DNA of 64,000 bases from Vitrella brassicaformis CCMP3155. Its lineage: Eukaryota; Protista; Chromerida. The stretch is taken from assembly GCA_001179505.1 (NCBI GenBank), contig CDMY01000466.1, forward strand, positions 1 to 64,000, written 5' to 3'. Below the pieces are notes generated by a model. The model worked only from the letters and a program-made list of their open reading frames with translations, searched no databases and was not told where the DNA came from. Numbering within the stretch: the first letter of the stretch is position 1; each line of letters begins with the position of its first letter. This document shows positions 1,343 through 53,100 of the stretch, piece by piece. The position numbers and the translations under genes are program-made.

Positions 1343-2692
1343 AGAGAGAGATAAGCTGTGTGTGCGGGTGGGTTTTTGCGTCTGGATGTCGGCCTCCCCT
1401 CCCTCCCTCCCTCCCTCCCTCGTCGTCTGTGCCGCTTCTTCTTTCCTTGTCTCCTTGCTCGACTACTGACTGCAACTTACTGTCTCGTGTGTGTGTGTGT
1501 GTGTGCGCGTCTAGCCTTTTTTGTGCCCCCTGGCTGGCTGAGGAAGTGCGCCGAGAGGGATGCCTTGGGTCTGTCTGCCATGTGGGTTGAAGGATGATAT
1601 CTATACTTTATCCGGTTCGGTACTTTAAGCCATGCCCCACGCACCCCTTCCACCGCCATCCATCCATCCATCCACCCACCGCCCCCCACCCCTCACTTGG
1701 TCAGCGCTTTTTTGGTGGCTGCCCGGCTGCCTGGCTGCCTGGTTGGTTGGGTGCGTGTGTGCTCATCCAGAGCACTGAGTGCATATATGCAACGCACGAA
1801 CGCTGCCTGCCGCTGGCTGTCTGTCTGTCTGCCGGTCCATACATCTCTTGATCCACCCCTGTCTGTCTGGTGGGGCGGTTGTTGCTTTGTTGCCGATCGC
1901 TACACACGAGGCGTAGGTACGTCTCACTCACTGGCTCGTTTGCCCCCTATCGCACTCTCATTCTCTCTCTCTGTCTTGGCTTTTCTTTATGGCCTGCCTT
2001 GTGTGGTGTGTGTGTTGGTAGTTGGCTGCCTATTTATTGACCCTTGCCTGCAGTGATGATTGAGTGATGGAGTGAGTGAGTGAGTGCAGTGGATGGATGG
2101 ATGGATGGTATACTAACCTACCTACGGGCCTGTATGTATGTCTGTATGTGTAGTGCTGCTGATGGATTGACTGAGCGAGAGTGAGTGAGTGCCTCGATGG
2201 ATTTTGTTTGATCATCACTACGCGGACGCAGGCAGACAGCTCGCCAGGGCCCGACGGACAGTGTGAGTGTGTTCATGGGCTGTGTGTATCTGTGTGTGAC
2301 GTGCGATGGATCAGTGCGGGCCAGCACGGCCGATCGCACCGATGGATGGATGGATGAATGAGTGGATGGAGGACCGTGCGTTCGTGTGCGTGTGCGTGTA
2401 TTCAACGACAAACATTGTGCGTAACATATGTACACATCCATCGATCGACGGTGACATCATGATGCACGCCTCCCTGCCACTCAGTCAGTCAGTCAGCCAG
2501 CAAGTCAGATAAGCTATGCACAGTCACACAGCTAGCTGCCGTCTACACATGCGACCCTTGCCCCCGTGCCTGGGTGGTGGGTGGGTGGTGTCTATCATCC
2601 CCCGTCTGTCTCCTGCCACCGTCAAAGTCACCCCTCCTCTCTCGGGCATCGTAGCACCACACAAGTCGCTCGCTAACAAGATGGCCCCGCAC

Positions 2693-5600
2693 TCACAGAT
2701 AGACGTGTCGAGTGGCCGTGATGGCCTGTCGGCACCGGGGACACAGCCGCTGGGCCACTGGCTTGGACATCAAGACCGCAGCACACACACCGCACAGACA
2801 GAAGTGGCGCTGTAAACACACACACACACACACACACACATACGTGGGCAGCGCATGGCTGAGAGGGACAGGTGAGTCGTTGTGCCTGTGGGTTGGCTTA
2901 CACAGGGGATGAGTACGATGGACTTCTTCTCAGCCATGCAGATGTCACACTCAGTGCTCTCCTCGAGTCTGCAGCAAACAAGACAACCACAGCAGCAGTG
3001 ACTGCGGTTGCCCATTTGTGTGTGTGGGTCAGGTGTTGGTTGGGCCTACCTGTCCTTTTCGCGCTTGATGTCCTCTTTTTCTCTAAGTATGGCCTCGTTT
3101 GTCCTCTGCATGGCCTCCTTCTCCAGCCGCATGGCCTCGAGCTGCTGGCGCATCAACTGCAACTCACTCACCTCACCACCACACCTGCAGGCAGACACGC
3201 ACGCAGGCACAGTGACTGTTGTCTGTCAGTCTCGATTCTTCAGCTGCTCTGTCCATTGATGTGTGCGTACCTGTCGTGACCACTGCGGCCCTCCACCTCC
3301 ACCGCCGTCTGCAAACTGCTACTGCTACTGCCCCCGGCTGCCAATGGGGGGAGGCCAGTATGGCCACAGCCAAGACGGCTACTGGATGGTGCTGGTGTGG
3401 GTGTGGGTGTGGGTCTGTGTCGGCTGGGAGGCTGTGGGGGCGGGGCGGCCGGGCGGGGCGGCAGAGGGAAGGGCACGGCTGGCGCGTTGTGGGGGCCGCC
3501 ACACACTGACGAGTTCGATGATGAGGGCCGCGTCGACTCGGACGAAGACGAAGACGGGAAGACTCCCGAGCTGAACACACAGGCACACCGGAGTAGTCAG
3601 TGCTCAGTGTTGTGGAGTGCTTTGCTGGGTCTTACTTGTCATCTCGTTTGTCAGCCGTGTTGGTCTGCTGCTGCTGCTGTGTGTGGCCGCCAGTGTCTTT
3701 GCCGCCCCTCTTTTTCCGGCCGACGGTGATGAAGCCGCCGCCATCATCGCCACCACCACCCGCCCCTTGCTGCTGCCCCCTGCCGCCCCCCACCGACACA
3801 GAGGTTCCGCCGGCAGCTGACGATGAGTATGAGCATGATGGTCGGGGAGGGGAGGGGGGCGACGGGCTGGGGGGACCTGGAGGGCCATGATGGTCTTCGG
3901 CGTCCTCCTCCTGGTGGTCGGTGCGGTCTTCGGATGTGCCAATGGCGGCAGCACTGTCCGCAGACATCCATGCGCATCAATCATCAATCAGCTGAGTAAG
4001 ATGAGGACCCAATTGGTCTGTTCTGTCACCTGGATGATGATGTCGTCTCGGTGCTGTTGTCCCCCCTGCCGCCCCTCTTGCCGCCTTTCGACTTCTTGCC
4101 GCCCTTGGTGCTGCTAGTGGTGCTACCTGGTGCTAGTGGTGCTACTTCGGCCAGCAGCTGTGCGTCGGCCCACTCCTTGGCCGCACTCTCTATCTCGTCA
4201 AACAAATCCAACAACTGGCGCTCAACACATGCAATGATATGGATACGGCCCGTGTGAGCGTCACGTGTGCATAACTTCCCACCTCCTTGGGCGCTGTCAG
4301 TTGCTGCTGCTGCTGCTGCTGCCGCTGGTGTCCCTTACGTCGTCCATTCGGCTGCCGGACAGCGGCCGCCCGCATCGCCTTGACGGCCTCGTGCTGTAAA
4401 ATGGCTCGTGTGACGCCATTGGGCCGGAACTTGCCCCCTCGGCTGCTCACTCGATCACCATAGCTGCACCGACAAGACATCCACAACACACGCAGGAATA
4501 CCCACCATCCTCAACCAAGACGCCAATTGCCCACTGCAGGCGTGTGTGTGTGTGTGTGTGTAGACCTGACGAGTGCCTGAAGGGTTCTGACGGCGAAGTC
4601 TATAAAGCCGTCCACCATGTGGTGGTCGATCTGACCGTTCTTGATGCAGGCGATGGCCACGTCACACAGCGCTCCTGGAAGGCCGTCACGCACAGCGATC
4701 TGAAAATGGGCAACACACAATGGCCATGGCCGCATCCATCCATCCATCCGTCCGTGCTGACCTTGGCGCGCACGTCGGTGAGGTCTGTGTCGCGTCCGAC
4801 GATGTTCTGAAGACTCGCCGCACAGTAGCCACCTCGTCAACTGACTCCTTGTCGAGGCGCTTGGCGATATCCGACGCCATCGATATGCATCCGGAAGAGT
4901 AGACGGCATCACGATGGCCACACACTGCCACAATGCACACATTAGCGCAACACACCCACAAGGACACAGTGATGTAACACTTCCCTCCCACGCAGCCTCC
5001 CTCGTGTCATTCGCTCACCGGCCAGCATCTGCGGGACAGCCAGGGGCAACGTGGTAGTCGTAATTTTAGAAACAAGAGTAGTGGCGAGGCTCTTGACGGC
5101 CGTGACGTATGCCTGCAGGGCCTTGGGCGCTCTCATCAAACGTTGGACGGGCCCATCCGGCAAAGTAGCAAAGTAAGCAGTACCTGCCCAGACGCACACA
5201 CACAAGCAGCCAGCAATCGATGCGATGCCACACCCCCACACACGGATGGAGCCTGTCTGTCCGTCCGTCCGTCCGTCGACCTATCTCTTTGGCATATATT
5301 GCGAAAACGGAGCAGCAGTCGAAGATGTACACGCAGCAGGTGGTGGCCCCGTCTCGCACAACGTCGTCTGCGTCAGGGGACGTCAGCAGGCCGCAAAACG
5401 TGTCGACGAACGGGAAGATGTCTTGTCGCATCGCAGCCAGATACGCAGCACGGTCATCTTCCGACCCTGAAAGGAGGCGCACGACGGCCAGTCAGTGACA
5501 TCAACCACATTGTTCAGTGAAGATCTGCCTTGTTTGGCTCCGTACCGCTTTTGGCCACGTATTGTATGTTGGAACAGAGCAACGTGCCGACATAATGCAC

Positions 5601-6402
5601 ACCCACGGCGCGCCTAAAAAGTGAAGAACAAGTGCAAAAACAACAACATCCTGCACATGCAGCAAGCCACTCACATCTTGTCTCGCGTTTCCGCCTTCCG
5701 ACTTGTGAGGCACTCCACCAGCGCGCGAAACACTCCCACACAGACACAGACGGGCATGACTGTGGGTGGGAAAGGCGGGCCGTCTATCGGGACCGTATCG
5801 AACACTGTCCTGATGAAGGCCAGCGCCGTCCTGCCGCAAGGATGATCCTCTGCTATCTTGGCCACCATCGAGAGGGCCTTGTCGAGGATGGCGGGGCAGT
5901 GCTTGATCAGATGGTCTCGTGTGTCGACCGCGTTGCCCTCTTGTCGGCCCAGGACCATGGCGCCCGCCAGCAGGGTGAATGCGCTCATTTCCAGCCGAAA
6001 AGCAGTGGTCTGGGTCAGCACGGACGCCAGCATGCTGATGAATGTTCGCGGCGATCCAGCGATGGGGATGAGATAACCAGCAACTTCCCAGGCGCTGTCC
6101 CTGGCGTCGGCCTTCCGCTGGCACAGGAACCACAGCACGCTGGCCGCCATCCCCTGGCGGGCCGGGTTGCCGCCATCTGTGAATGCGTGATAGGCGCGCC
6201 TCAGCAAACGCTGGTTGAGGAGCTTCTTGCCCAGGGCCTCCCAACTTCCTCCAGGACCTCCGCTCAGAAAAGCGTCCGTGGCATTCGCCCCCACCACCTT
6301 CAGGCTACTGTCGAAGGCATCATCTGGCAGCTCCTCCGGCGACGAGAGGAGAGCGATGGCCGCGTCGAAGCCGGAGGGACGAGAGTTTCCCAAGCTGGTC
6401 AT
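2693..6402 (-). CDS. Helical-repeat (ARM/HEAT-like) / coiled-coil / C-terminal C3HC4 RING protein, putative E3 ubiquitin ligase (paralog 1)
   Basis: Long first exon MTSLGNSRPSGFDAAIALL... is rich in amphipathic helices. It is followed by a low-complexity linker and a coiled coil (ELQLMRQQLEAMRLEKEE). The spliced RING reads CDICMAEKKSIVLIPC|RHFCLCGVC...LCPRCR, ending RHVYL* with TGA at 2695-2693. Internal exon boundaries are approximate. Confidence 0.8.
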
Positions 6403-7220
6403 GACTCAGACGCCCCGGCGTAGATCAGGGCTAATCTATGTCGTCAGGAGGCTGGCCCGACAACACGCGCTGCCACACGGTGGGCAACCGACGCCAAACG
6501 GACGAGAGGATGAGTAGACCAGCACCTACAACGAGCAGCACGTATGGCGCTTGTCGATGGTTCTTTTCGTGCCTTTTTCATCTCTCACCCTCGGAAGTGA
6601 TATACAGGACCTCTGGGCGTTACTAATAGGCTGCCACCTCTGTCGCGAGGGGCTGGTCTGTCCTCTCGTGACTGCGAGCTGGAATGCCGATCGCCGCGGC
6701 GAAAAACCATCGCTTCTGAGGTTCCCACTCATCATATAGCCAGCGCCAGCCGTTGGATCTGTGGGTTCATCCATCGCTTTCAGCCATCGTCGTGATGATG
6801 TTATCTTATCGGTTCGCGTCGGTGTGCGGCGCTCCCTATCAGGGCGGCCCTCTCTGCTTCACTGTCCCCGACGCAGACAGCCTCCTCTGCCCTGTAGGCA
6901 ACCGCGTCAACGTGTTTCAGACCTGTCGCTGACGTCGTTGGTATGGACAGTGCTGCGACGCTCTGAACTCATTGAGTGTGTTGACAAGAGGTACGAACAC
7001 ACCACAGAGCAGACAAGCTCATCACGAAACTGCGCATCCGTGTGCTCTCCGGTGCGTCCTCTCAGCACCCATGTGAGGCGTTGCTGTTGTGTCCTGTCAG
7101 CAAGTGCTGATCTAGCCCATCAGGTGGGTGCGGTGCACACACAGGCAGGATGGCATCATATCATGCCCTCTCACTTATCTGGCGGCCGTGTCGTGTGATG
7201 GTTGCTCTTTATCAGACCAC

Positions 7221-19025: not shown

Positions 19026-19781
19026 TCAAAAGGGCGCCGCGACGTTGTCGGCCCTCCTGAGATGGAACCTCTGCCCTGCAAACAAACAAACAAACAAACA
19101 AACAACGATGAGTGAGTGAGTGCACAGAAAGCTGTATCTCAGTCCATGCGCACCTCTTGGCGTCATCCTCCGCAAGTTCACATCGTCGACCTCCCCATTT
19201 GTCTCAAGTGTCTCACCCGCCTACACACACACCACACCACAACAGACACAGACACGCCATCATAAGTGCATCCGTGACCACGTCTGATCGACAAGTCGCT
19301 GTCTGCTCGTCGAGCCCACCCCACCTACCTGATCCGCTGCGGTCGTGTTGGTGATGAACTCGATGATCTCGTCCGCCGGATGGTATCCGTCAAAAGTAGC
19401 GGGCGTCTTGCCCTTTATGAAGAGCCTGAGGCTCGGGTAGCCCGGCAGAGCATATCTGTCGCACACGTCGGGGTTGCCGTCGGCCTCGCAGTCGACCTTG
19501 ATGAACTTGACAGGCGGCTCGTGCGAGGTCAGATTCGCCGCCGCGGTGTCCATCGCAGGCAGGGTCCGCTGAGACCACCCACACCAGGGGGCGTAGAACA
19601 TGACCATCACGTATCGGTTGCCCTTGATGATCTCGTCGAACTCCGCCCCTCCAGTCACATTCAGCACCTCCGCTGTCACAGTGGCGTTACCCACCTGCCC
19701 GCTCACCGAGGCGGGATAGCCGCTGAGCAGGAGGAGGGGCACAGCAAGATTGATCAAGAGGCGCGGCTGCATGGCTGGCAT
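19026..19781 (-). CDS. Secretory-pathway single thioredoxin-domain (PDI-like) protein with WCGWS active site
   Basis: Signal peptide MPAMQPRLLINLAVPLLLLSGYPASVSG. Thioredoxin a-domain motifs VMVMFYAPWCGWS, FIKVDC and ALPGYPSLRLF. The 3' exons beyond the donor near 19329 are tentative. Confidence 0.8.
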
Positions 19782-19932
19782 GGCTGGTCGGATAGAGAAA
19801 AAGGTGCTGATGGTGAGCGTCGGCGGCGTGTGTGCTGGGAGGGTCACACTCGATGGCGAGGGAGGAGGGGACGAAGGGGAAGAGAGGGGAGGAGAGAAAA
19901 AACGCAGATCTCTCAAACTTCGGTTCCTTTCA

Positions 19933-19963
19933 GGGTTTTGGGTCAAGGGTTTTGGGTCAAGGG
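19933..19963 (+). repeat. Five GGG tracts with 4-nt loops (14-nt direct repeat agggttttgggtca); G-quadruplex-compatible and telomere-like
   Basis: gggttttgggtcaagggttttgggtcaaggg, read directly in the divergent intergenic region between the PDI-like and PHD-PINIT genes. Confidence 0.6.
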
Positions 19964-20088
19964 TTTGGAAAACCCAAGAGCCAACGTGTCACCTGCACAA
20001 CAATGAGAAGGTCCGCATCAGAGATGCAGAGGTGAGGGAAGGAGGAGGCGCAAGCAGGGCGACAGGCAGTGCATCTGTGTTAATGTGA

Positions 20089-23000
20089 ATGCACCTCACA
20101 CACACGTCCCCAGTCGACAACGACCAGCCGGCGTCATCCAGTGCGTCGGCTGCCGCTGCTGCTGCTTCGGCCGGAGGAGGAGGTGGCGGTGGCAATGGCG
20201 TGGTGTCTGATGCGTGTCTGTGCCAGTGGATGGTGGACAGAATGGCAGATGTGGGTGAGCAAGGAGGAGCCACCCTTCCCTGCACACTGTGCCAGCAGAT
20301 ATACGTACGCACGGGAGAAGGAAAAGGAAACAAAACGAGACGCTTGATGTGTGTAGCTCTGTGTGTGTGTGTGTGTGTGTGTGCAGCACGAGGGGTGCGT
20401 GCAGTACTACGGCGAGAGGCGCCTGTTCGTCTGCCACATGTGCCGCTTCCGACAGATGGACCCTGGCAGACAATTAGTACACACATTCGCCACACACAGC
20501 ACACTGCAGCACAGGACACGAGTGTCGTCGTGGGCATGGACGGATGGATGGATGGATGGATGGCAGGTTGGGCGTCCCATGTGGTTATGTGCGCTGGGTG
20601 GCGGCAAAGACAGACGGGACCACCTCATCGACATGGAGAGACTTCTTGACGGGCGCCTGTGGTGGTCAGCCATGCACGCAACACAGACATCCGCGCGCAC
20701 ACACACATGCCACGTCATGTTCGCTATGCTCAGGGAGCGGCAGGCGATTGTCGTGCGGTGTCTGTCGGCCCACGACTCCTCCCCCAGACAAACGTGGCCT
20801 GAGGAACTGGATGTGACCGTCAACAGCGAGGTGGGCACATACACACACACACACACATACACACGCAACACAGCAGCCACCCGTGTGTGTGTATGTTGGG
20901 TGCAGCTGGCGATCCGATTCAAGAGGCAGCAGGCCGAGCGAGAAGAGCCCAGAGATGTACTCGGCCGCACACACACACACACACAGTCCATCTGATCCAT
21001 GTGTGTGTGTGTGTGTGTGTGCAGGTGACAAGATACTTCCTCACACACACCGTCAGCAACGTCACCGTCGAGTACCGCAACCCGCCCTCAGACGTACCCA
21101 CACACCACACCACACCACACCACACCACACCGATGTATCAGTGGCTGGATGGATGGATGGATGTCATATGTGTTGTGGTGTGTTGTGGTGTGGTGTGGTG
21201 TGTTGTGGTGTGTGTGCAGATTCGTATCCTGGGGTTCTTCGTGACCTCTCACGACCCCTGGGCCGACACGAATGTGCGCCGTCCGCCGACAAACTCACAG
21301 ACACGACAGACAGACAGACAGGCAGACAGACAGACGACCAAACCAACCTGCCTGCGTCACTCTCTCTCCCCTTCTGTGTTTGCTGTGCTATGTGTGTTTG
21401 ATGCACCGGTGCTGCGTCCATCCATCCATCCCTGCAGAGTCCCACATCGCAGCGGCAGAGTCTCAGGGACTTCTACGACAACGGGCCAGCGCCAGCACAA
21501 CCGCCAGCGCCACCAGCAGCAGCAGCGGCAGCAGCAGCAGCGCCGTCCTCGAAAGTCTTGACGGGGCGCAAGGCGACGGGGGGCAAGGCGTGAGCAAAGC
21601 ACTCACTCCACACACACACACACACACACACAGAGACACCCATGTGAAGCGTCACTGGGTGTCGTTGTGCTGCATGCAGGCCGAGGAAACAGGTAGCGAC
21701 GCTGCGCAGTGCCCCAGCAGCTGCCGCCAGTGCCGCAGCAGGGGCATCACCACCACCAGCAGCAGCAGCAGCAGCGCCGTCCTCGAAAGCCTGGACAGGG
21801 CGGCTCATGTGAGCAAAGCACTCACTCCATACAGACGCACACGCACACGCACACGCACACGCACACGCACACACAGACACAGACACAGACACAGACACAC
21901 AGACACCCATGTGAAGCGGCACGTGTCTGAGGTGTCTTTGTGCTGCATGCAGGCCGAGGGGTCAGCTGGCGACGCTGCCCAGTGGGTGGTGTGGCAGGAT
22001 GCAGAACCTCGGTGGGCCGTTTCCTAGCGGGGTGGCGTTTCTTAGCGGGGTGCCGTCTCGGCCCCAACCAGCACGCGACACCGAGGAGGAAAGGTGGGCG
22101 GCTGGGTGGAGGCGGGAGACAGACGCTGCCAGATACGAGTATTCGCCCCTCACTCTCACTCTCACTGTCTGTCTTTCCGTCCCCTTAATGGCTGCAGCGG
22201 TGGGCCATCGCGCGGTCGTTCGAGCAGCGTCCCCCGGTGGGTGTCGGCAGCACCCACCAGCCCCTCGGCCGCCCCCAACAGGTCAGCGTCGGCTCCACCA
22301 TCCCCAGCCAACAGAGAAACGTCTGCCGCCAGTGCCCCAGCAGCTGCCGCCAGTGCCGCAGCAGGAGCACCACCACCACCAGCAGCGGCAGCAGCAGCAG
22401 CAGCAGGTGGTGGTGGTGGTCCCATCAGGTGGCATTCAAGGACATGGCGGATGGACCTATCGGACGTCGCTGATGGGATGGATATGGATGACGACCGTAA
22501 CGGCCGGGACGATGACGACTCCGACTCCGACGAGGACATGCGGCCGATGAAGGAAAGGCTGGCCGGCCGGTTGCCGAAGGATGGCCTGGGGTTTTTCAGG
22601 TCCAGACGGGCCCCAAACATACCCGCAGAGTGAGCGGGGAAGTCGGCAAGCACAGACAGGACAGACAGTGATGAAGATGACCCCCCCCACCCCACACAGA
22701 CACACGTGGTGGCTGGACGTGTGTCTGTGTGTGCCAGGCCTGAGAGCCCAGGGGATCCGACCAAGTGCTGCTTGTGTAAGGTTGGCGAGCCGGCGGTGTG
22801 TCTGCAGCCGTGCGGCCACCTGCTGTGCGGAAGGTGCTTCGCCAGCAGGCCACTCGAGACTCTCGGCGGTCTCGAGAGGGCAGAGGAAGCCTTTGAGGCA
22901 GACCTGGTGCGTGCGGCAAACACCACCGACAAACACACATACTGCGTGAATGTGTGTGTCGATATGGGATGACTCCTCTCTCTCATTGTGTGTGTGTGTG

Positions 23001-26000
23001 TGTATTGGGGCGGTGGTCAGGACAATGTGTTGGACAGCAGGGACAACGAGCTCATCAGATCCTCATCATGCAGCCACGTCCACCGATGTCCCCGATGCAA
23101 CTGGTAGATCCACCCAGCTCTCACCCACCACCCACACTCCATCCATCCATCCATTCATCCACTCACGCACCTTTCTTCTCTCTTTAGGTCGGTGAACTGT
23201 ATCACGGAAGCGGACGGCAGCACGCCCGTGGACGGGTGGAGGTTCCTGGGGAAGAGCCTCAAGGACGTCCTCAGGCAGCGAGAGGCCATGGGCGACTCAT
23301 TGCGGATGGACCTCGAGGCTCTGCTCACCCGAGGCGACCTCAACGATGAGGGGGTGCGGGAGCAGATCAAGGCCATGATTTACCCCCGCCCTGCCGTCGC
23401 CAAGATGATCATGTCCAGGGGCATCGTCAAGGAAAACGATATGAGACAAGTAAGCAAGTCGGGCGTGGGTGAGGGAGGGAGGATAGACGGTCGTGAGGAT
23501 GACTGGCTGGCTGGATGCATGTGTCTGTGTCTGTGTGTTCGCGCTGTCTCTCTCTTTGTCTAATGTGTGTAGTTCTTCCCCGACCGGATGGCGTCTGTCA
23601 TTCGCTTCCTCCTCTTCAAAGGTACCAACACGACCAGAACCACCCGACAGACCAGGCCCCCATCGCCAATTTGTACCTGACCCCTTCCCCCCCGCCACCT
23701 CCCGCTGTCAGGCGATTGGTCCCTGGTCAACCAGCTGGTGCTGCACGGCCTCATTCCCCAACCTGAGCTCATCACCGTCCTCAGAGACGCATGCCAGCTC
23801 ATTCTCAAGGTCACGATGGCCGGTCGCGCCGAGTACCTGGCGCTCGTCGACACGCTCATCCCTCTGGCGAACATCAACCTCACCGATGACGATAGCTCCC
23901 CGCTGTCCATTCTCGCCAACAGAGAGGGCCCCTGCACACAGGCTGAGAGGGCCCTGATTGCCGAGTGCGTCCAGAAGCTGATTGACGGTGGTGCGCGTGT
24001 GGGGCGGTTCTCGCTTCGCCAGACGTTGCCGATGCCGCTGGTGCGGCAGCTCATCAAAGTCCCCAATTCTGACCTCACAGGTAGATTGATCAGGTCCACA
24101 GGCAGACCAGCACATCCACCGATGTATGTGGTCTGGTTGTGTGTGTGCATGTGTTCAGACATCCACCCCAACGGCGACACAATCCTCCACACGGTCATCA
24201 ACAGGATGTCACTCCAGGACTTCACGCGGCCCGTCGTCAAGCCCGACGGGTCCTACAACCCCGCCGTCGACGCCATCCTGACCATCCTCCGCATCCGCCG
24301 CCAGCCCGACGGCTCACTGCTGCTGCTCAAGGAGGGCAGACACTACCCCGACGCGCCGAGGGTGCCGGACAGAGTGGCGAGCATGGCCAACCTCGAGGGC
24401 CATCTGCCGCTGCATCGACTCATCAAGAAAGCCAGGGTCAGTCTGACAGTGTCTCTCACTCACTGCCTCTCTCTGTGGGCACTTGACACACTGCGGCCTC
24501 AACACAAGGGCAGGCGGGCAGGCAGGCAGGCAGGCAGAGGAGAGAAGTGGGGCGACAGCCGTGCGGCACTGCCTGCTTGCCTGTCTGTCTGTCTGTCTGT
24601 TTGTATGTTTGTATGTGTGTGTGTTAGGAGTGTGGCGGGTCGACCACGTGCAGTGCGGCCTTCGACCTGGTGCTCGAGGCGCTATTCAAACGAGGAGGCG
24701 CCCCATGGGTAATTATTATTGACGACATCGACAACATCAACTCGCACACACAAACACACCACACCCATGTGTCTGTGTGCATCTGTGTCTGTGTGAAGGG
24801 CTTCACCCGCAACCGCGCTGACCCCGCCAATGTTCATTTTGTGGACCCGCCCGTCTTCATCCATTGGAACGAGATCGTCCTGGGCGACGGCGACTGGATG
24901 CACAGGTGGTTCCACGACAAGCCGCTCCTGCGCAAGCTCTTCGCCAACGGGATGGACACCAACATCCGCGACACCAAGGGCAACACGCTGCTGCATCGAA
25001 GGTGGGGCGGGGCGGGGCGAGGCGAAGGGGGGGTGGGGGGAGAAGAGCAACACGGGCACTGACGAGAGAACCTGCACCCGTGCCCACTCTGTATGTGTGT
25101 CCCCGTGTGTGTGCGTGTGTGTGTGCAGCATCCGCCAGGGATCAGGTAGGTCACCCGTCAAACACGTGCAGAGATGCCATGACGACGCATTGCATTTCCC
25201 CCCGTTCTTTTGTCTTGCCTTTCCTTGCGTTGTGTGCAGCGGGTCGTGAGGACGTCGTGGGCTTCCTTCTCTCGCAGGGCGTCGACCCCTCCGCCCGCAA
25301 CCACGCCGGCGAGACCGCCCTCGGCATGCTCTACAATCTCATCGCCACTCGCCCACTCGCATTCGAGCCGGCGCACCTGCTGAGTGTGCTCGTGTCCCAC
25401 GGGGCCGACACCCACGACATCCGCCGCCACGATGGCCGCCCGCAGAGCCTCTTGAGCCTCTACAGGCCGCAGGGCATCCCGACCGCGGTGCGCCGTGGTG
25501 GGCCCGGCAGCACACCCCCACCGACCATCAGCGTGTCAGCGGAGCAGTATAGGGCTGTGAGCGATGCGGTGGCGTCTGGGGATCGAAATCAGTGGGTGCA
25601 CCAGACGGCATAATGGCATGTGTTGATCGACTGGAATGTGGTGCACGGTGTCGCATTTTGTTTGTATGTATGTATGCCAGGTTGGTGGGGGTGCTGGTCA
25701 ACATGTGTTTGATGAAGACCTTCTGGCCCGTCAACTCGCACATCCCACGGGTAAGTGAAGTTGGTGGGGCAGGGAGGGAGGGAGGGAGGGAGATGCGCAC
25801 GCACCCCGATACACACGACCATGGGTGTGTATGTGTGTGTGTGATGTGTCAGACCCCGTTGTGGCGTGAGGCATTGTTTGGTTCCCCCGGCCGTCTGATG
25901 AGTTACATGCGCATGGGGGCCCTCATCGACCCCATCCCGCCCGACCTTCGATCCAGACCAGCTACCGCCACCGTCATCCGAAGTACGCAACCCACCCGCA

Positions 26001-27245
26001 CATAACCGTGTGAACAACTATGGTCGCCTTTGCTTGTGGGTGGCGTCTGTCTGTCTGTGTGTGTGTGTGCAGCGTACCACTCGTATCTGCAGGGGAGCAA
26101 GAAGCGAGTCCGTTATGCGCTGGAGGGGTGGACGGCCGCCATGTCCGAACTCACCAATGACGTCCCGCGCGACTCGCCACTAGGCCACTTCCTCACCGAG
26201 CGGCTACCGGAGAGCCTCATGGCACAAGTCAGTACACAGCGACAGCCGACAAGACAAGACACACACACAGACATACTGACTATCTACGTATACCGACAGC
26301 ACCTGCACGTCTGTCTGTCTGGTTGTGGTGCGGTCCGCCGTGTTGGTTCAGTTTTATTCGTATATGCTGCCGCCGACGTTTGCAGCGCTGCCCTCCCATC
26401 TGTTCCCCGGCAACACGCCCTTCCACAATGCCTGTCGGGGCATCCTGACGTCGCATATGCACACCATGGCCACTGAGTGCGCCAAGGGACCCGGCGGCCT
26501 CGGTGAACCAGGAATCGGTGAGATCAATGACTGCATTACGTATGCGCTGCGCCATCTGTGCGGAGTGGATGGACTTTGCCTGTGTGTGTCTGTGTGTGCA
26601 GAGCTGCTCATCATGGCCTGTGTCATCCTCCTCGAGCCTGAAATACTCAAGGAGGGCCTCAGGGTAGGGTACGGTGCCAGAGTGGCCCCATGGAACTCCT
26701 CTGTCTGTCTGTCTGTCTGAGCTCAGGTTGGCATCTACGAGATGATTCCCCCGGCCACACCAGACCCACAGCAGCAGCAGCAGCAACAGCCATCATCATC
26801 ATCGTCATCATCATCGTCGAGCGGCGCTGCTCCTCTCCAGAGTGATGCATTCATGGCCCTCAGCGATGCCAACGCAGCGCTGTCGACACTCGAGGCAAGT
26901 GTGGAGGCCATCATGACGGCCCTACGCCAGGCCAAAGAGCAGGCTGCTGTCGACGGGGCGGCCAATGGGGGCGGCGGCGGGGGCGGGGGAGAGGCCGCAT
27001 CATCCCTCAACGCCGGACCACCTCAGCAGAGCAACAACAACGCGGCGACGGCAGCAGCCGCAGCCTCGGAGCCCGTAAGGCATACAGACACTTACATAGC
27101 AAGAAGGTGTGACCGGCCCTGGATGAGTGTTTGCTTCTTCCGTGGTTCCATTATGCAGGCGTCGTCCGCTGGTGTGGGTGTCCGGAGCGGCAGCGCTGGT
27201 GGTGTGGATGAGTCGGCAAGGCCCGCCCGCAGACAGAGGCTGTGA
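20089..27245 (+). CDS. PHD finger / PINIT-like / Ala-Pro low-complexity / C3HC4 RING / ankyrin-repeat protein (about 25 exons)
   Basis: GT-AG phases chain consistently from PHD (CLC...CTLCQQIY|HEGC...CHMCRFRQMDP) through PINIT-like (QTWPEELDVTVNSE, EPRD|VTRY, ILGFFVT), RING (CCLC..QPCGHLLCGRC...CPRC) and ANK (NGDTILH, DTNIRDTKGNTLLH, GVDPSARNHAGETAL). The model includes a 17-nt micro-exon at 25129-25145. The start codon and the last two or three exons are uncertain. Confidence 0.7.
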
Positions 27246-27569
27246 CTCACTCGCACATCGGCAGTCAGTCAGTCTGTCGGCCACAGCAGCAGCATAGCAG
27301 AAGACAGGCCAGCAGAAATCAATTAATTGATTGATGCAGGTCAATTGATTGATGCAGTGGGGAGGGCGGGAGGCAAGGAGGGAGTAATTTTGCCCCTAGG
27401 TGGGTTTTGACCTGGTCGGTCAGCGTGTCTGTGTGTGGCTTGCGAACCAATTGAACCGATTGTCTGGGCTGATCAACACAACTGCAATGCCCGAAGCAAT
27501 GACTTCGATCCCTCCTCACACACCTGCGAGCTTCTATCAAACGAACCAATAAACGAACGATGCTGGCGG

Positions 27570-27633
27570 TTCGGACTGTTTGGACACTCTGGATCTACCA
27601 GCAGTGTCGCAGATATGCAGCGTTATCGCAGCC
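27570..27633 (+). promoter_or_regulatory. Conserved 64-nt element with stem-loop, copy A, immediately upstream of and spanning an in-frame AUG
   Basis: Matches 33884-33947 with 7 mismatches, all transitions. Stem GACACT-CTGG / CCAG-c-AGTGTC at 27583-27608, loop ATCTA. Confidence 0.6.
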
Positions 27634-28901
27634 TCTTCGTCCAGTGTGGTTCCGTCCACACGATGGTGCGCCTTCTCCGCCTGCTGATCCTCTTCCTTCT
27701 TGCCGCAGCCGTGCTTGGCTTCACGTTGCCTCCTCATTCCCGCCGTTCTGCCATCGGTGCTTTCCGGTCTCGTAGAGAGGCAAGTCGACGCCGCAGGGGA
27801 CTCATGCACATGGTATGCACTGACGCAGCCAAGACGCTCACACTGTGTGTGCCTGTCTGCCTGTCTGTTTACTGCCAGGTGACGTTCCGCAACGTCAGAG
27901 AGGGCTCCGGCTTCCGCCCCATAATGGAGGAGGAGTGGCAGCTCAACCCGCTGGAGATCCGCCGCAACATCTCTGAGGGCGACTTTGGGACTCGAATTAA
28001 CACATCCTTCACGCTTGGCAAGGAGTTCGACCACCCCGCCGCCTTGCTTGGGACGCTGGTGTGGCCCATTGTGCAGGAAGTGGCCATCGCGGGCTACCCC
28101 AACTTAATTATGCACGCGCACAACCTGTGGACGCGATTCAGCCGCCAGACGGGCAAACTCATGGGAGAGGTACGGACGTACAGACAGTGAGAGATTGTCA
28201 ACCACACAGGCGAATTTCACGCCAGCACTCACTCCCTGGCCTGCCTCTATTGCTGTGAATATCAGCAGCCCGCCTTCGTCCTCACATGGGGTGAGACATC
28301 ACAGGCCGTTCTTCTGGATCGTCTTCGACGGCAGCGGTGGCCCACTCGACCTGGCCAAGACGGCCGCACACATCCGCAAGAAAAAACTCGGCAGCGTAAG
28401 CCAACACACAGGCACACCCAGCCACTCACACCCACACCCACTCACACACACACACGGGGACGGGTGTGTGTGTTCTTGTTGCAGCATGGGGCGGTGACGG
28501 ACGGGCTCGAGTGGTACATGGTGGAGCTGCCTGATGAGAAGGACAGCCCCGGACCGGATGAAAGGCTGGGTTTGTCCCGTATGAAGTCATGCGTCACATT
28601 CGACATCTGTGACCAGGTCAGCCGCACACACACACGCACATCTGTGTGTCGGCAGCTGCTTTAACGCATCCATGTGCTGCCTTGATGTCATTCACAACAA
28701 TATGCCCAGGCTCAGGATATCGTCGACTGGATTCTGGGCAAGCTGAGGGAGCGGGCGGCCGAGTGCCCAGAAGAGTGGGAGCACACGCCGGAGTGGCGGT
28801 CGACACGGGCAGCACGGGAGGAGGCCGAGAGGGCCGCACAGCTCGAGAAAGAGAAGAAAAAGAACCACAAGAAAAGTGGGCAGACGATGGCAACCACCTG
28901 A
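27615..28901 (+). CDS. Putative plastid-targeted protein of unknown function, possibly a degenerate restriction-endonuclease-like fold (5 exons)
   Basis: In-frame ATGs at 27615 and 27663. Signal peptide MVRLLRLLILFLLAAAVLG-F, then an Arg/Ser-rich transit peptide. Exons chain to ...GQTMATT* (TGA 28899-28901). Contains GAVTDGLEWYMVEL. The boundaries of the third exon are uncertain. Confidence 0.65.
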
Positions 28902-29312
28902 GCCTGAGGGCGCAGCCAGGTCGGTGGGTGGGTGGGTGGAAGGCGAGGGGGGCAGGGAGGGGCTGCCTGGGTGGCTGTCGGTAGGGAGAGGCAGACTCTC
29001 TCTCTCGTCGGGGTAGTGAGTGGGTGCATTTATGTCAGTCAGTCAGTGATGGACGGATGCTTTGGGTCTTTTTGCCGTGTACACAGTGATGCTTTGAGAT
29101 TTCATACACGGGTGCCTGTCCGCTCGCTGTGCGTTGCACCCAATCGCCTGGACGGATGCATGGACTCAGTTTGCGCCTTGATCATTGACGAAGTTCGTCT
29201 ACATACTGTCCAAATGCACCCTCCCTCCCTCCATTTGTCCCCCTGTCAGTCGCCGCCCCTCTCCACTGCAATCGATCAATCAAATCAATCAATCACAGAG
29301 GCAAAAACAGCC

Positions 29313-49407: not shown

Positions 49408-50119
49408 CGCCTTGATGCGATAAACGAGAGCGGCATTGTTGCCCGCGCAGTTGCTTCTGACTGATGCACTGCTACTGACAATGACGGGACTGCTACTGAC
49501 AATGACGGGGTAGCCGTGGCACGTGATGGTGGTGGTGATGTGTGAGGGTGAGGGTGAGTGTGGGTGGGCTTGCTGCCAAAGGAGTGGGTGGCATGTATGT
49601 TGCGTTTAGTACCAAGGAGATTGGCTACATAGAGAGCGTCAGTGTGGACGCATCCCATCGCTGGCTTGTATGCATCAACCGACCCTGACACGTATGGTCC
49701 TGCAATCCAGGACTGACTGAACATCTGTAGGTGTCAGCGTGTGTGGGTGATCCACATACACACAAAGATGGGTCATCAGTCAGTCAGCGGTGTTGTAGAT
49801 TGCGTCATTCGTGTGATCAGAGCTATGGACAAAGCAGCCAGCCAGCCAGCCAGGCAGGGAAAGTAAGTCTGTACACATCGACCGGCCGACCGACCATATC
49901 CACCCACGCCTCTCTCTCACTCTGTCAGTCAGTCCGCCAGTCAGTCAGTCAGTCACATCTATGCTATGCACACACAGCTGCCACCCACCCACCACACCCG
50001 CCCCCCAATATGAATGGCTCGTCTATCGGCATGTCACTCATCCAACAGCCACCATCACCTCCTCTCGTGCGTCGTAGCACCAGACAAGTCGCTCGCAATC
50101 TATCAATATGGCCCCGCAC

Positions 50120-53100
50120 TCACAGGTAGACATGTCGTGTGTCCGTGATAGCCTGTCGGCACCGGCGGCACAGCCGTTGGGCCACTGGCTTAGACATCAA
50201 GGCCGCAGCACATGCACCGCACAAACAGAAGTGACGCTGTAGACACATACACATACACACACACCCACGTGTGGGCAGCGCATAGCTGAGAGGGACAGGT
50301 GAGTCGTTGTGCCTGTCGGCTTACACATGGGATGAGTACGATGGACTTCTTTGAGGCCATGCAGATGTCACACTCAGTGCTCTCCTCTAGCCTGTGTGCA
50401 GCAAACAAGACAGACGACCAGCCACGGCCAGCCAAGGGAGAGAGACGGGCGGCCGCCCATTGTGTGTGTTGGCTAGAGTTGCTAAGATTACCTGTCCTTC
50501 TCGCGTTTGATGTCTTCCTTCTCCTTGAGTATGGCCTCCCTCTCCAGCCGCATGGCCTCGAGCTGCTGGCGCATCAACTCCAACTCACTAACCTCCCCAT
50601 CACACCTGCAGCCAACCACACACACAGGCACAGTGACTGTTGTCTGTCCGTCTCGCTTCTTCGGCTGCTCTGTCCGTCAAAGCGTACCTGTCCTGACTAC
50701 TGCGGCCCCCGGCTGCCAAGGGGGCGAGGCCCTGCTCGTCACAGCCAGCACGGCTAGTGGATGGTGCTGGTGTGGGTGTGGGTGTGTGTCGGTTGGGAGG
50801 CTGTGGGGGCGGGGCGGCCGGGCGGGGCGGCAGAGGGAAGGGCAGGGCTGGCGCGTTGTGGGGGCCGCCAGACACTGACGAGTGCGATGAAGAGGGCCGC
50901 GTCGACTCGGACGAAGACGAAGACGGGAAGACTCTCGAGCTGAACACACAGGCACACCGGAGATGTCAGTGCTGAGTGTGGTGGATCCCTTTGGTGGGTC
51001 TCACTTGTCATCTCGTTTGTCAGCCGTGTTGGTCTGCTGCTGCAGTGCATTGCCGCCAGTGCCTTTGCCGCCCCTCTTCTTGCGGCCGACGGTGATGAAG
51101 CCGCCGCCATCATCGCCACCACCACCCGCTCCTTGCTGCTGCTGCCCCCTGCCGCCACCCATCGAGCCAGAGATGGCCGACGGCACCGATGCAGACGACG
51201 ATGAGTATGAGCATGAGGGTCGGGGAGGGGAGGGGGGCGACGGGCTGGGGGGACCTGGAAAGCCACGAAAATCTTCTGTGTCCTCCTCGTGCTCCTGGGT
51301 CACGGGCTCCACGTCTATGTTGTCAGCGCCAACACTGCGTGCAGACCGACAGACACACACCGTCTGCATGACAGCTTTCGCCCGTCTGTCCATCTCAGTC
51401 ACCTGGATGATGATGCCATTTCGTTGTTGTCGGTCGTCTTGGTGCTGTTGGCCCCCCTGCCGCCCCTCTTGCCCTTCGATCGCCTCTTGTCGGCCCTACT
51501 GCCGCTGCCGCTGGTGCTGATGTTGGTGTTCTTCTGGCCCTCATCTATGTGGTCATCTGCCAACTCGGCCGCTAGATTCGCCTCGGCCCGCTCGTTGGCC
51601 GCCTTGTCTATCTCGTCAAATAACTCCACCAACTGACACACAACATACAGTTAATGTGCCCCGTTACCATCAATCTGTGTGTCAGGTCATGTATGTCGCC
51701 TACCTCCTTGGGCACTGTCAAATGCTGCTGGTGTCCCTTGCGTCTCCCCGGCTGTCTGCCGGCCGCGCGCATCGTCTTGACCGAGTCGTGCTGCAGGATG
51801 GCCTGGGTGACGCTGTTGGGACGGAACGTGCCCCCTCGGCTGCTCACGCGATCGCCATAGCTGCACTCAGGAACACACAGAACACGGACAGCACTGTGAC
51901 TGACGTGCGAGAGAGGAAGCGCGTGATGGAAGCAGACGCGCATGTGTGTATGCCGACCTAACAAGAGCTTTCAGCAAGCCGATGGCGACGTATACGAAGG
52001 CTTCCACATAGTCCTGACGGATCTGGCGCTTAAGGAGCTCGAGCAGCATCTGACACATGGCTGCTGGGAGTCCCTCGCACACAGCAATCTGCATCCATTC
52101 ATCAGCAGCCACATAAGCAAAATGCGTCACCACCCATCCTGCCTGTCTGCCTGCCTGCCTGTCTGACTGACTGACTGACTGACCTTGGCGCGATCGCCAG
52201 TGAGGTCTGTGTCCGACCCTACGATGAAGGGCAGGTTGTATGCACAGAAGAGCAAATTCTCGTCCGCTATCTTGCTGATGGGTTTGCCGAAGTCCGACAC
52301 GATCGAGATGCATCGAGACCGGTACACCTCACTGCGATGCCCACACACTACGTTCACATACACGCAAAGACGCGCATACAGAGGCACTGCAGTCCATGTC
52401 TTGTTTCTGGCCCGTGCCCCACCCATTTCTCTCACCGGCCAACATAAGTGGGATGATAAGGGCCACCTTATTGCTGCCCATGGCTTTCGTGGCTGTGGCT
52501 GCGAAGGCCTCCAACGCCCCGGGCGATCGAACAAGACGCTGAACAGGCCCGTCAGCAAGACAGGCAAAGTAATCCACATCTGCAACCACAAACCGACACA
52601 AAAGGCATCAAGCCATGGAGACAGAAAGACGCAAAGAAGAAGGATCTGTCCCACCTATGACTTTGACGAAATCGTGGCAGAGCCAGAAGATGCTTGAGAT
52701 CTTCCGGGCGGCAGCAAAGCGCACTGACTCGTCCGCGTCGGAGGTCAGCGTGGCGGCAAATGTGTCAACGTAGGGGTAGACGTCCTTCTGCAGCGCCTCC
52801 AGACACTCAGCACGCTCCGCATAAGACCCTGAACAAGACGGCCGGACACCGACCATATTCAGGTTGTGTGTCCCGACCGACCTACCTACCTGTCTCAAAC
52901 ACAAATTTCATGTGTGTGCTGATGAGGTCCCTGACGCCCCAACACCTGAGGAAGAACAAGAACCAACGACAACAGGGAGGGACATTATTACGGAGGGCCC
53001 TCTTGGACCGGCCGGCTGGCACTCACATTTTCTCCCCCGGGCGTGTCTGACACTTGATCAGCACATGCCAGAGCCCAACCCACAGGAAGGTCGGCATGGG

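What the first reader, a model, noticed from the sequence alone, without database searches (positions are those of the whole stretch)
20089..27245. SIZ/PIAS-like PHD-PINIT module joined to a canonical C3HC4 RING and ankyrin repeats instead of an SP-RING
Seen: splice phases chain continuously from a PHD ending in the SIZ1-like 'CRFRQMDP', through a PINIT-like beta-domain (WPEELDVTVN, PRDVT), an Ala/Pro-rich spacer and an acidic patch (DMDDDRNGRDDDDSDSDED), to a RING (CCLC..PCGH..CGRC..CPRC) and ANK repeats. Established: in SIZ/PIAS SUMO E3s, PINIT is followed directly by the SP-RING (MIZ). I see no SP-RING here. Inference: a SUMO-ligase substrate-recognition module has been re-wired to a ubiquitin-type RING, possibly giving a new chromatin-reading E3 or STUbL-like enzyme.
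Basis: partly seen in the sequence, partly recalled or inferred. Interest (0 to 1): 0.7.

Follow-up and report, generated by a model that had tools for sequence, protein, structure and literature searches.

The report
PHD–PINIT-like RING ligase with H3-tail copy
A chromerid alga (Vitrella brassicaformis) expresses one 1469-residue orphan gene that puts a PHD finger, a probable PINIT-type domain, a near-copy of the histone H3 tail, a classical RING finger and ankyrin repeats on one chain, an arrangement not described before, with its function untested.

Summary
28 GT-AG exons between 20089 and 27245 (+) translate exactly to a public Vitrella brassicaformis CCMP3155 gene model (P0008, 1469 aa). 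Spliced RNA contigs from two studies bridge the supposed gene end at 22027 and join the acidic exon to the RING exon. The spliced model also predicts the exact lengths (971 and 399 nt) of two RNA unitigs.

- **Domains:** the Cys/His patterns are a full C4HC3 PHD and a full C3HC4 RING with a 45-residue loop. Ankyrin repeats pass Pfam thresholds. No zf-MIZ/SP-RING is found.
- **Weak point:** the PINIT call rests on a sub-threshold hit to the sister family PF25527 (E 0.009) and on language-model neighbours that are all PINIT clusters. PF14324 does not hit, no sequence relatives exist, and both AlphaFold models failed.
the linker carries LTGRKATGGKAPRKQVAT, 14/18 identical to histone H3 residues 5-22. 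It is formed across a splice junction and is followed by a decayed tandem copy.
- **Paralogue:** a truncated copy (P0001) holds only the post-RING part, at dN/dS 0.66.

Verdict: a lineage-specific RING-type E3-like protein and a new domain arrangement. The "SUMO-module rewired to ubiquitin" reading is only partly supported. Another note of this scan reports an H3-tail mimic on a different ankyrin protein of the same genome (not checked).

The parts
20002..20088 (+). 5' leader. The RNA contig starts at 20002. It holds short uORFs at 20004 and 20083.
   Evidence: record 21 (X7) starts at 20002. Sequence read.
20089..27245 (+). Whole coding region: 28 GT-AG exons, 1469 codons plus stop. It equals the public Vitrella brassicaformis protein P0008.
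   Evidence: exact translation match. for the source names.
20215..20443 (+). PHD-type C4HC3 zinc finger, aa 43-91, exons 1-2. Ligands: C43, C45, C65, C68, H73, C76, C88, C91.
   Evidence: Ligand pattern. Pfam PHD E 0.003, 18 bits, below the cut-off of 24. Best PDB hits are PHD fingers.
20567..21273 (+). PINIT-like beta domain, aa 103-225, exons 3-7. Contains WPEELDVTVN and PRDVT.
   Evidence: PF25527 E 0.009 over aa 139-188. Atlas feature neighbours are all PINIT/ZMIZ clusters at 0.88-0.89. The poor model is all-beta in secondary structure.
21552..21716 (+). Histone H3 tail replica, aa 264-288 (KVLTGRKATGGKA|PRKQVATLRSAP). It spans the exon 8/9 junction, with the intron at 21590-21679.
   Evidence: In a PDB phmmer search, all 60 listed matches (of 135) are histone H3 N-termini, E 6e-4 to 4e-3. 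The junction is proven by the 971-nt unitig.
21777..21986 (+). Decayed second copy of the H3-like unit, aa 309-330 (PSSKAWTGRLM|PRGQLATLPSG). It arose by tandem duplication of exon end, intron and exon start.
   Evidence: Direct repeats D3, D4 and D5 at 84-87% identity. Sequence.
22451..22537 (+). Acidic Asp/Ser patch, aa 451-479, in exon 11.
   Evidence: This exon is joined to the RING exon in RNA (joint 22629/22738).
22766..23098 (+). C3HC4 RING finger, aa 520-592, exons 12-13, with a 45-residue loop between ligands 6 and 7.
   Evidence: Ligands. zf-C3HC4_3 E 1.4e-4, 22 bits, below the cut-off of 27, matching the first 32 of 49 profile positions only. Both exons lie in the 845-nt RNA contig.
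23188..27245 (+). C-terminal, mostly helical region, aa 594-1469, with irregular ankyrin-like repeats. Pfam-detectable repeats are at aa 982-1042 (24922-25325). This part is duplicated in paralogue P0001.
   Evidence: Ank_4 39.8 bits. The homology to L001 starts at 23120. ANK-like GxTxLH motifs at aa 826, 901 and 1001.
25129..25145 (+). 17-nt microexon inside the ankyrin region.
   Evidence: The RNA joint 25001/25237 carries inserted letters in X1, X6 and X7.

Best explanation
This is one expressed, lineage-specific Vitrella gene for a multidomain RING-type E3-like protein.

**Shown**
- The exon chain and the single mRNA.
- Complete zinc-ligand sets for a C4HC3 PHD finger and a C3HC4 RING.
- Ankyrin repeats.
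- Absence of an SP-RING.
- A histone H3 (residues 5-22) look-alike in the disordered linker.

**Inferred**
- The domain after the PHD has the PINIT fold. On that reading the N-terminus resembles the chromatin and substrate-recognition half of plant SIZ1-type SUMO ligases.
- The RING recruits a ubiquitin E2 rather than Ubc9.
- The PHD, PINIT-like and ankyrin parts select chromatin-associated targets.
- The H3-like segment keeps the equivalents of R8, K9, K14, R17 and K18 but not the free A1-K4 end. It acts in cis as a pseudo-substrate or decoy. It could be an acceptor of the ligase's own ubiquitin, or a competitor for H3-tail readers and writers, including the protein's own ankyrin or PHD modules.
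For: **One gene**
- The P0008 gene model is identical to the 28-exon chain.
- RNA joints cross 22091/22196 and 22629/22738.
- The spliced model, with its 36-nt exact internal repeat, predicts k=31 unitigs of exactly 971 and 399 nt. Those are the observed contig lengths (records 21 and 17/22).
- A divergent thioredoxin gene ends about 150-300 nt upstream, so no further 5' coding exon fits.

**Domains**
- Ligand patterns.
- Pfam: PHD 0.003, PF25527 0.009, zf-C3HC4_3 1.4e-4, Ank_4 5e-10, and no zf-MIZ.
- Atlas neighbours of residues 40-235 are zf-MIZ/PINIT/SAP/PHD clusters. Those of residues 100-235 are PINIT clusters, with 192-195 of 256 features shared and 10 of 10 in one clan.

**H3 replica**
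- All listed PDB hits are the H3 N-terminus.
- The decayed second copy keeps H3's own 'QLAT', so the ancestral unit was closer to H3.

**Precedents**
- The SIZ1 PHD reads H3K4me3 (PMC6954211).
- The PHD+RING ligases UHRF1 and PHF7 ubiquitylate the H3 tail (PMC12704277, PMC10760634).
- The histone-mimicking linker of BAZ2B tunes its PHD (PMC5663869).
Against: - All three N-terminal domain hits are below the Pfam gathering scores, and PF14324 itself does not hit.
- No PIAS, Siz or SIZ1-PHD chain is found in the PDB at E<=10.
- Neither AlphaFold model is usable (pLDDT 39 and 44), so no fold test was possible.
- The N-terminal module has no relatives outside this genome. The C-terminal part has only one paralogue plus generic ankyrin hits.
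- The duplicated C-terminal region evolves at dN/dS 0.66, which indicates weak constraint.
- The RING has an unusual 45-residue loop, and Asn replaces the usual basic residue after the last Cys. Activity is therefore not assured.
- The H3-like segment is internal and lacks A1-K4. Classical PHD binding to a free H3 N-terminus cannot apply to it.
Confidence: 0.6

Rival explanations
1. This is a young chimeric gene with little or no selected function. Exon shuffling and segmental duplication stitched together a degenerate PHD/beta module, a captured fragment of an H3 gene, a RING and an ankyrin body. It is transcribed but evolves almost neutrally.
For: - No orthologues were detected.
- dN/dS is 0.66 against the paralogue.
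- The ankyrin body exists alone as a truncated duplicate whose breakpoint lies inside intron 13.
- The second H3-like copy has decayed.
- The linker is low-complexity: 64 Ala and 38 Pro in 278 residues.
- All N-terminal domain scores are sub-threshold.
Against: - All 16 zinc ligands of the PHD and RING are intact.
- The 4.4-kb ORF stays open across 28 exons.
- It is expressed and correctly spliced in two studies.
- The CDS is about 93% identical to the paralogue, against 87-89% for the whole duplicated segment including introns. So exons are more conserved than introns.
- The first H3-like copy keeps 14 of 18 identities.
Confidence: 0.25
2. The beta domain at residues 103-225 is not a PINIT domain but an unrelated beta-sandwich. 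On that reading the protein is simply a PHD-RING-ankyrin ubiquitin ligase with no link to SIZ/PIAS.
For: - PF14324 gives no hit at E<=10.
- No PIAS or Siz chain is found in the PDB. The only weak hits are XisI and an NFAT Ig-like domain at E 0.5-0.8.
- Atlas scores are under 0.9, which the tool rates as a lead only.
Against: - The only Pfam family hit is the PINIT-type domain of ZMIZ1/2. It covers exactly the WP..L.V.VN to P.DVT core.
- The ten best named Atlas neighbours all belong to the PINIT/ZMIZ clan, with high shared-feature counts.
- The domain sits directly after a PHD finger. From my own knowledge, not tested here, this is the order in plant SIZ1, and the motifs align with the PIAS1 PINIT motifs.
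Confidence: 0.2
3. There are two genes: a PHD-PINIT gene ending before about 22400 and a RING-ankyrin gene starting inside exon 11. The annotation and the reader joined them wrongly.
For: RNA contigs break between 22359 and 22391, so no single listed contig spans exon 11.
Against: - The break falls in a GCA/CCA low-complexity tract inside one uninterrupted exon and ORF.
- The contig on its left already carries the 22091/22196 joint and reads into exon 11. The contig on its right continues in the same frame into the RING exon.
- Depths on the two sides are similar in both runs (64.9 vs 99.7 in X6, 11.5 vs 18 in X7). The tool warns that contig depth is a weak measure.
- There is no in-frame stop and no ATG-led restart signal.
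Confidence: 0.06

Closest known systems
Plant SIZ1-type SUMO E3 ligases (SAP-PHD-PINIT-SP-RING-SIM)
   Same: A PHD finger sits directly N-terminal to a PINIT-type beta domain. The first ligand pair is C-x-C, and the last pair has a Cys-x2-Cys-R-x-R-x-x-D-P tail (similarity recalled from memory). The SIZ1 PHD reads the H3 tail (PMC6954211).
   Different: - No SAP, no SP-RING/zf-MIZ and no SIM.
- About 290 disordered residues separate the beta domain from a classical two-zinc C3HC4 RING.
- An ankyrin C-terminus is present.
- Sequence similarity to SIZ1 is too low to detect with phmmer or with Pfam PF14324.
PHD+RING ubiquitin ligases acting on histone H3 (UHRF1, PHF7)
   Same: A PHD reader and a RING lie on one chain. 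These enzymes ubiquitylate lysines of the H3 tail (PMC12704277, PMC10760634), and equivalents of K14 and K18 are present in this protein's H3-like segment. From my own knowledge, UHRF1 also acts on H3-like mimics in PAF15 and LIG1; a LIG1 methyl-lysine read by the UHRF1 tandem Tudor domain is mentioned in PMC7585203.
   Different: There are no UBL, Tudor or SRA domains. The H3-like sequence here is part of the ligase itself. No homology was detected beyond the generic finger types.
Ankyrin-RING E3 ligases with zf-C3HC4_3-type RINGs (plant XB3/XBAT, Mind bomb)
   Same: The RING subtype is the same: zf-C3HC4_3 is the best hit, with a weak RING_XB3-XBAT31 hit. It is combined with ankyrin repeats.
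   Different: - The order is reversed, with the RING before the ankyrin repeats.
- The RING carries a 45-residue loop insertion.
- There is an extra PHD/PINIT-like/H3-like N-terminal half.
Intramolecular histone mimicry (BAZ2B PHD-BRD linker; from my knowledge also the G9a and LIG1 ARK-type mimics)
   Same: A disordered linker next to a PHD finger resembles the H3 tail and could compete with H3 (PMC5663869).
   Different: Known mimics are short motifs or merely Lys-rich stretches. This one is an 18-residue stretch with 14 identities to H3 residues 5-22, including nine in a row (TGGKAPRKQ), and it is tandemly duplicated.

Membership tests
SIZ/PIAS SUMO E3 ligases | SP-RING (zf-MIZ, PF02891) | tested here: not met
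   No zf-MIZ hit at E<=10 on P0008 or on any sub-piece. The finger present has all eight C3HC4 ligands.
SIZ/PIAS SUMO E3 ligases | PINIT domain (PF14324) N-terminal to the catalytic finger | tested here: inconclusive
   PF14324 gives no hit. The sister family PF25527 reaches E 0.009 and 16.9 bits, below its cut-off of 26. Atlas neighbours are all PINIT clusters at 0.88-0.89. No PDB hit. The model failed.
SIZ/PIAS SUMO E3 ligases | SAP domain and SIM | tested here: not met
   No SAP hit. The CDS starts 87 nt after the start of the RNA contig, and a divergent gene lies just upstream. The only SIM-like motif lies inside a predicted beta-strand.
RING-type (C3HC4) E3 ligases | Eight zinc ligands in C3HC4 order with cross-brace spacing | tested here: met
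   C520-x2-C523-x11-C535-x-H537-x2-C540-x2-C543-x45-C589-x2-C592. The 45-residue loop is at the top of the accepted range of 4-48 (range from my knowledge).
RING-type (C3HC4) E3 ligases | Profile match above the curated threshold | tested here: inconclusive
   zf-C3HC4_3 scores 22-24 bits against a cut-off of 27, with E 3e-5 to 1.4e-4. Only profile positions 3-32 of 49 match, because the loop insertion splits the domain.
RING-type (C3HC4) E3 ligases | E2 binding and ubiquitin transfer | not testable with these tools
   This needs in vitro assays with ubiquitin E2s and with Ubc9.
PHD finger | C4HC3 ligand pattern, plus a profile match | tested here: inconclusive
   The pattern is complete: C43, C45, C65, C68, H73, C76, C88, C91. 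PF00628 gives E 0.003 and 18 bits, below its cut-off of 24. The best PDB hits are PHD fingers at E 0.01-0.5.
Ankyrin repeat proteins | Ank profile match above threshold | tested here: met
   Ank_4 39.8 bits (cut-off 22.7), Ank 30.5 bits (21.1) and Ank_3 25.8 bits (22.3), at aa 982-1042.
Histone H3 | N-terminal tail sequence | tested here: met
   Residues 266-283 align to H3 residues 5-22 with 14/18 identities. All listed PDB hits are H3.
Histone H3 | Histone fold core, and the tail at a free N-terminus | tested here: not met
   There is no histone Pfam hit in P0008. The segment is internal (aa 264-288) and lacks the A1-K4 equivalents. It is a mimic, not a histone.
SUMO-targeted ubiquitin ligases (STUbL) | Several SIMs plus a RING | tested here: not met
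   A pattern scan of aa 1-620 found one SIM-like motif, inside the beta domain. A pattern scan is a weak test.

The most novel reading that the evidence does not exclude
The protein is a chromatin E3 ligase that carries its own histone H3 tail replica. The replica would serve as a built-in pseudo-substrate or regulatory decoy, modified on the K9/K14/K18 equivalents and read by the ligase's own ankyrin or PHD modules. It would belong to a wider, undescribed habit in chromerids of grafting H3-tail copies onto ankyrin proteins. Scan note s1-212027 reports a second case in this genome, which I did not check.
Probability: 0.2. Interest if true: 0.8.

Novelty: new variant of a known kind. Interest (0 to 1): 0.55.

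Why it matters
If the fold assignment holds, this would be the first case I know of in which the PHD-PINIT recognition half of a SIZ-type SUMO ligase is combined with a classical two-zinc RING. That bears on how E3 specificity modules are shuffled between the ubiquitin and SUMO systems.

The H3(5-22) replica inside an E3-like protein is the longest and most faithful in-cis histone-tail mimic I am aware of. It offers a simple system for testing pseudo-substrate or decoy regulation of chromatin enzymes, in a photosynthetic relative of apicomplexan parasites.

Against this, the gene is a single-species orphan under weak constraint, and nothing about its activity has been tested.

Tried and rejected
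- **Exon-by-exon Pfam scans.** The pieces were too short. Only the RING exon gave E 3e-5, plus weak ANK and PF25527 hits.
- **The joined model.** I recovered the public protein instead. A 123-aa exon went to the search of protein representatives, which returned the paralogue P0001. P0001 went to the search for homologous proteins, which returned P0008. Exons were joined only inside scripts, to check identity with P0008 and to predict unitig lengths.
- **Relatives of the N-terminal module.** I searched residues 40-235 among proteins of 808-2570 aa and of 286-910 aa. Nothing but the protein itself came back.
- **Exon-16 search.** Apart from P0001, the hits were Calx-beta, SpaA and generic ankyrin proteins. 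I rejected them as compositional.
- **AlphaFold2.** Residues 38-240 from a single sequence gave pLDDT 39. Residues 600-1115 with the paralogue gave pLDDT 44. Both were too poor for fold search, so no fold search was run.
- **PDB sequence searches.** The PHD and the beta domain found no SIZ1, PIAS or Siz chains.
- **STUbL reading.** Rejected for lack of SIMs.
- **Hidden SAP exon upstream.** Rejected: a divergent thioredoxin gene lies there, and the RNA contig starts at 20002.
- **A full-length paralogue.** Rejected: L001 shows no match to P0008 residues 1-594.
- **Literature.** No paper links Vitrella with PINIT.
- **The search of earlier findings by sequence.** Blank.
Full report
**Organism and locus.** The window is a GC-rich (about 59%), intron-dense eukaryotic sequence. 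Earlier scan notes name Vitrella brassicaformis. This is confirmed here: the encoded protein is listed by NCBI/UniRef as an unnamed or uncharacterised protein of Vitrella brassicaformis CCMP3155, on a 369,086-bp contig.

**Gene structure.** Three-frame translation and splice-site inspection gave a chain of GT-AG exons.
- The 123-aa exon at 23714-24082 was searched against the representative library. It returned a paralogue, P0001 (961 aa).
- P0001 was searched in the word-indexed collection. It returned P0008 (1469 aa).
- A script that threads P0008 through the window finds 28 exons from 20089 to 27245, all GT..AG. Their translation equals P0008 exactly, stop included.

**One transcript.** Only contigs could be laid, not raw reads. 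Runs X6 and X7, from two different studies, contain spliced contigs and so derive from RNA.
- Joints with GT..AG ends were seen at 20663/20733, 22091/22196, 22629/22738, 23102/23187, 23449/23573, 23619/23710, 24077/24156, 24435/24627, 24707/24798 and 25001/25237. The last carries the letters of a 17-nt microexon.
- The 22091/22196 joint passes the TAG at 22025-22027, which lies in an unused frame.
- The mRNA contains a 36-nt exact repeat at 21707-21742 and 22330-22365. For k=31, the spliced model predicts unitigs of exactly 971 nt (20002 to 21736) and 399 nt (21713 to 22359). Contigs of exactly 971 and 399 nt are what one search lists (records 21 and 17/22).
- So exons 1-9 and 9-11 are spliced as modelled, including the exon 8/9 junction discussed below.
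- The only stretch not bridged is 22360-22390. It is a GCA/CCA low-complexity tract inside the open exon 11. The next contig (845 nt) runs from 22391 through the acidic patch, both RING exons and onward.
- Upstream, a divergently transcribed thioredoxin-domain gene occupies 19263-19946 on the minus strand. There is therefore no room for a SAP-encoding exon.

**Domains.**
- **PHD.** Residues 43-91 carry a complete C4HC3 pattern. Pfam PHD gives E 0.003 and 18 bits, below its gathering score. The nearest solved chains are PHD fingers (PHF24/KIAA1045, SP140, PHF21A), not SIZ1.
- **PINIT-like domain.** Residues 103-225 hit only PF25527, the PINIT-type 'GBD-like' domain of ZMIZ1/2. The match has E 0.009 and covers aa 139-188, from the WP..L.V.VN strand to PRDVT. 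PF14324 (PINIT) does not hit, and no PIAS or Siz chain is found in the PDB.
- **Language-model neighbours.** ESM-Atlas feature neighbours of residues 40-235 are zf-MIZ/PINIT/SAP/PHD clusters (0.87). Those of residues 100-235 alone are PINIT/ZMIZ clusters (0.88-0.89, 192-195 of 256 shared features, ten of ten in one clan). The tool rates hits under 0.9 as leads.
- **Models.** AlphaFold2 without an alignment failed (pLDDT 39), and no relatives exist to build one.
- **My estimate.** I put the PINIT fold at roughly 75%. It is not demonstrated.
- **RING.** Residues 520-592 have all eight C3HC4 ligands, with a 45-residue loop between ligands 6 and 7. zf-C3HC4_3 matches the first two thirds (E 3e-5 to 1.4e-4, below its gathering score). 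No zf-MIZ signal appears anywhere.
- **Ankyrin repeats.** They pass Pfam thresholds at aa 982-1042. Further GxTxLH-like motifs at aa 826 and 901, and an all-helical prediction, suggest an irregular ankyrin-like solenoid. The model was too poor to search (pLDDT 44).
- **SIMs.** Only one SIM-like motif exists in the first 620 residues, inside a beta-strand. The STUbL idea therefore has no support.

The 'Ala/Pro spacer' contains KVLTGRKATGGKA|PRKQVATLRSAP (aa 264-288). The bar marks the exon 8/9 junction.
- A phmmer search of aa 255-330 against all PDB sequences returns histone H3 N-termini as every listed hit (E 6e-4 to 4e-3). LTGRKATGGKAPRKQVAT aligns to QTARKSTGGKAPRKQLAT, with 14 of 18 identical and nine in a row.
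- The equivalents of T6, R8, K9, T11, K14, R17, K18 and T22 are kept. S10 is Ala, and the A1-K4 end is not conserved.
- The unit (exon end, intron, next exon start) is tandemly duplicated. The second copy (aa 309-330, WTGRLM|PRGQLAT) has lost five residues but keeps H3's own Leu20. The ancestral unit was therefore closer still to H3.
- There is no histone fold. This is a tail replica on a non-histone protein.
- Another note of this scan (s1-212027) reports an H3 N-terminal mimic on a different ankyrin protein of the same genome. I could not check it.

**Paralogue and constraint.** Window 23120-29106 is duplicated at 87-89% identity elsewhere on the same contig (L001 10512-16349).
- The breakpoint lies in intron 13, 17 nt after the RING's second exon.
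- The paralogue P0001 therefore holds only the post-RING region, behind an ad hoc 92-residue N-terminus drawn from another repeated intergenic segment.
- Over 853 aligned codons, dS is 0.094, dN is 0.063 and dN/dS is 0.66. Constraint is weak, although the CDS (about 93% identity) is more conserved than the segment as a whole.
- The direction of the event cannot be decided without an outgroup. It could be truncation of a copy, or fusion of an ankyrin gene behind a PHD-PINIT-RING gene.

**Interpretation.**
- *Shown:* a single expressed ORF with PHD, a beta domain, an H3-like linker, an acidic patch, a C3HC4 RING and ankyrin repeats, and no SP-RING.
- *Inferred:* it works as a RING-type ligase, most likely for ubiquitin. 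Its PHD, PINIT-like and ankyrin parts would choose chromatin-linked targets. Its H3-like segment would act in cis as a pseudo-substrate or decoy.
- *Precedents:* the SIZ1 PHD reads H3K4me3 (PMC6954211). UHRF1 and PHF7 are PHD+RING ligases of the H3 tail (PMC12704277, PMC10760634). The BAZ2B linker mimics H3 and tunes its PHD (PMC5663869). From my own knowledge, the ankyrin repeats of G9a/GLP bind H3K9me1/2. That makes an ankyrin-to-replica contact conceivable.
- *Main rival:* a young, weakly constrained chimeric orphan whose parts are not all functional.

**Novelty.** The gene is already in public annotation but uncharacterised. I found no paper on it and no described family with a PINIT-type domain next to a classical RING (one search found nothing relevant). 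I rate it a new variant of a known kind, a RING E3 with an unusual architecture. Interest is moderate. The H3 replica raises it, while orphan status, sub-threshold domain calls and weak constraint lower it.

**Limits.** No raw RNA reads were available, only contigs. Both structure predictions failed. 

Noticed in passing
window 19263-19946 (-): A thioredoxin-domain protein (PF00085, E 3e-18) with a signal-peptide-like N-terminus and an unusual WCGWS active-site motif. It is transcribed divergently from the E3-like gene across an intergenic region of 300 nt or less.
   Followed up: partly
window 23120-29106; L001 10512-16349: Segmental duplication at 87-89% nt identity on the same 369-kb contig. 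It gives a 5'-truncated paralogue (P0001, 961 aa) that starts at the homologue of exon 14, and it also copies the next downstream gene. dN/dS is 0.66.
   Followed up: yes
window 2639-6912 and 49794-51866; L001 5793-9753 and 16729-20323: A multi-copy family of 840-942-aa zf-C3HC4_3 RING genes, about 77% identical at the nucleotide level. Two copies are in the window and two flank the paralogue. Their RINGs are not similar to the one studied here.
   Followed up: partly
window 25129-25145: A 17-nt microexon inside the ankyrin region. It is confirmed by spliced contigs in three runs.
   Followed up: yes
window 20002-20088: The 5' leader holds a 10-codon uORF (ATG at 20004) and an ATG-TGA minimal uORF directly before the main ATG.
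   Followed up: no
window 24440-24627 (intron 17): GGCA/CTGT-type simple repeats collect thousands-fold contig depth and many loose ends in all four runs. This is a genome-wide abundant intronic repeat.
   Followed up: no
window 20305-21437 (introns 1-7): The introns are built of CA-rich 5' parts and TG-rich 3' parts, plus GGAT repeats, as another first-stage note (s1-218678) describes. I saw this but did not analyse it.
   Followed up: no
same genome, another piece (scan note s1-212027): A first-stage note reports a histone H3 N-terminal mimic (MARTKQTFRK) on another ankyrin protein. Together with the replica found here, it hints at recurrent H3-tail grafting in Vitrella.
   Followed up: no
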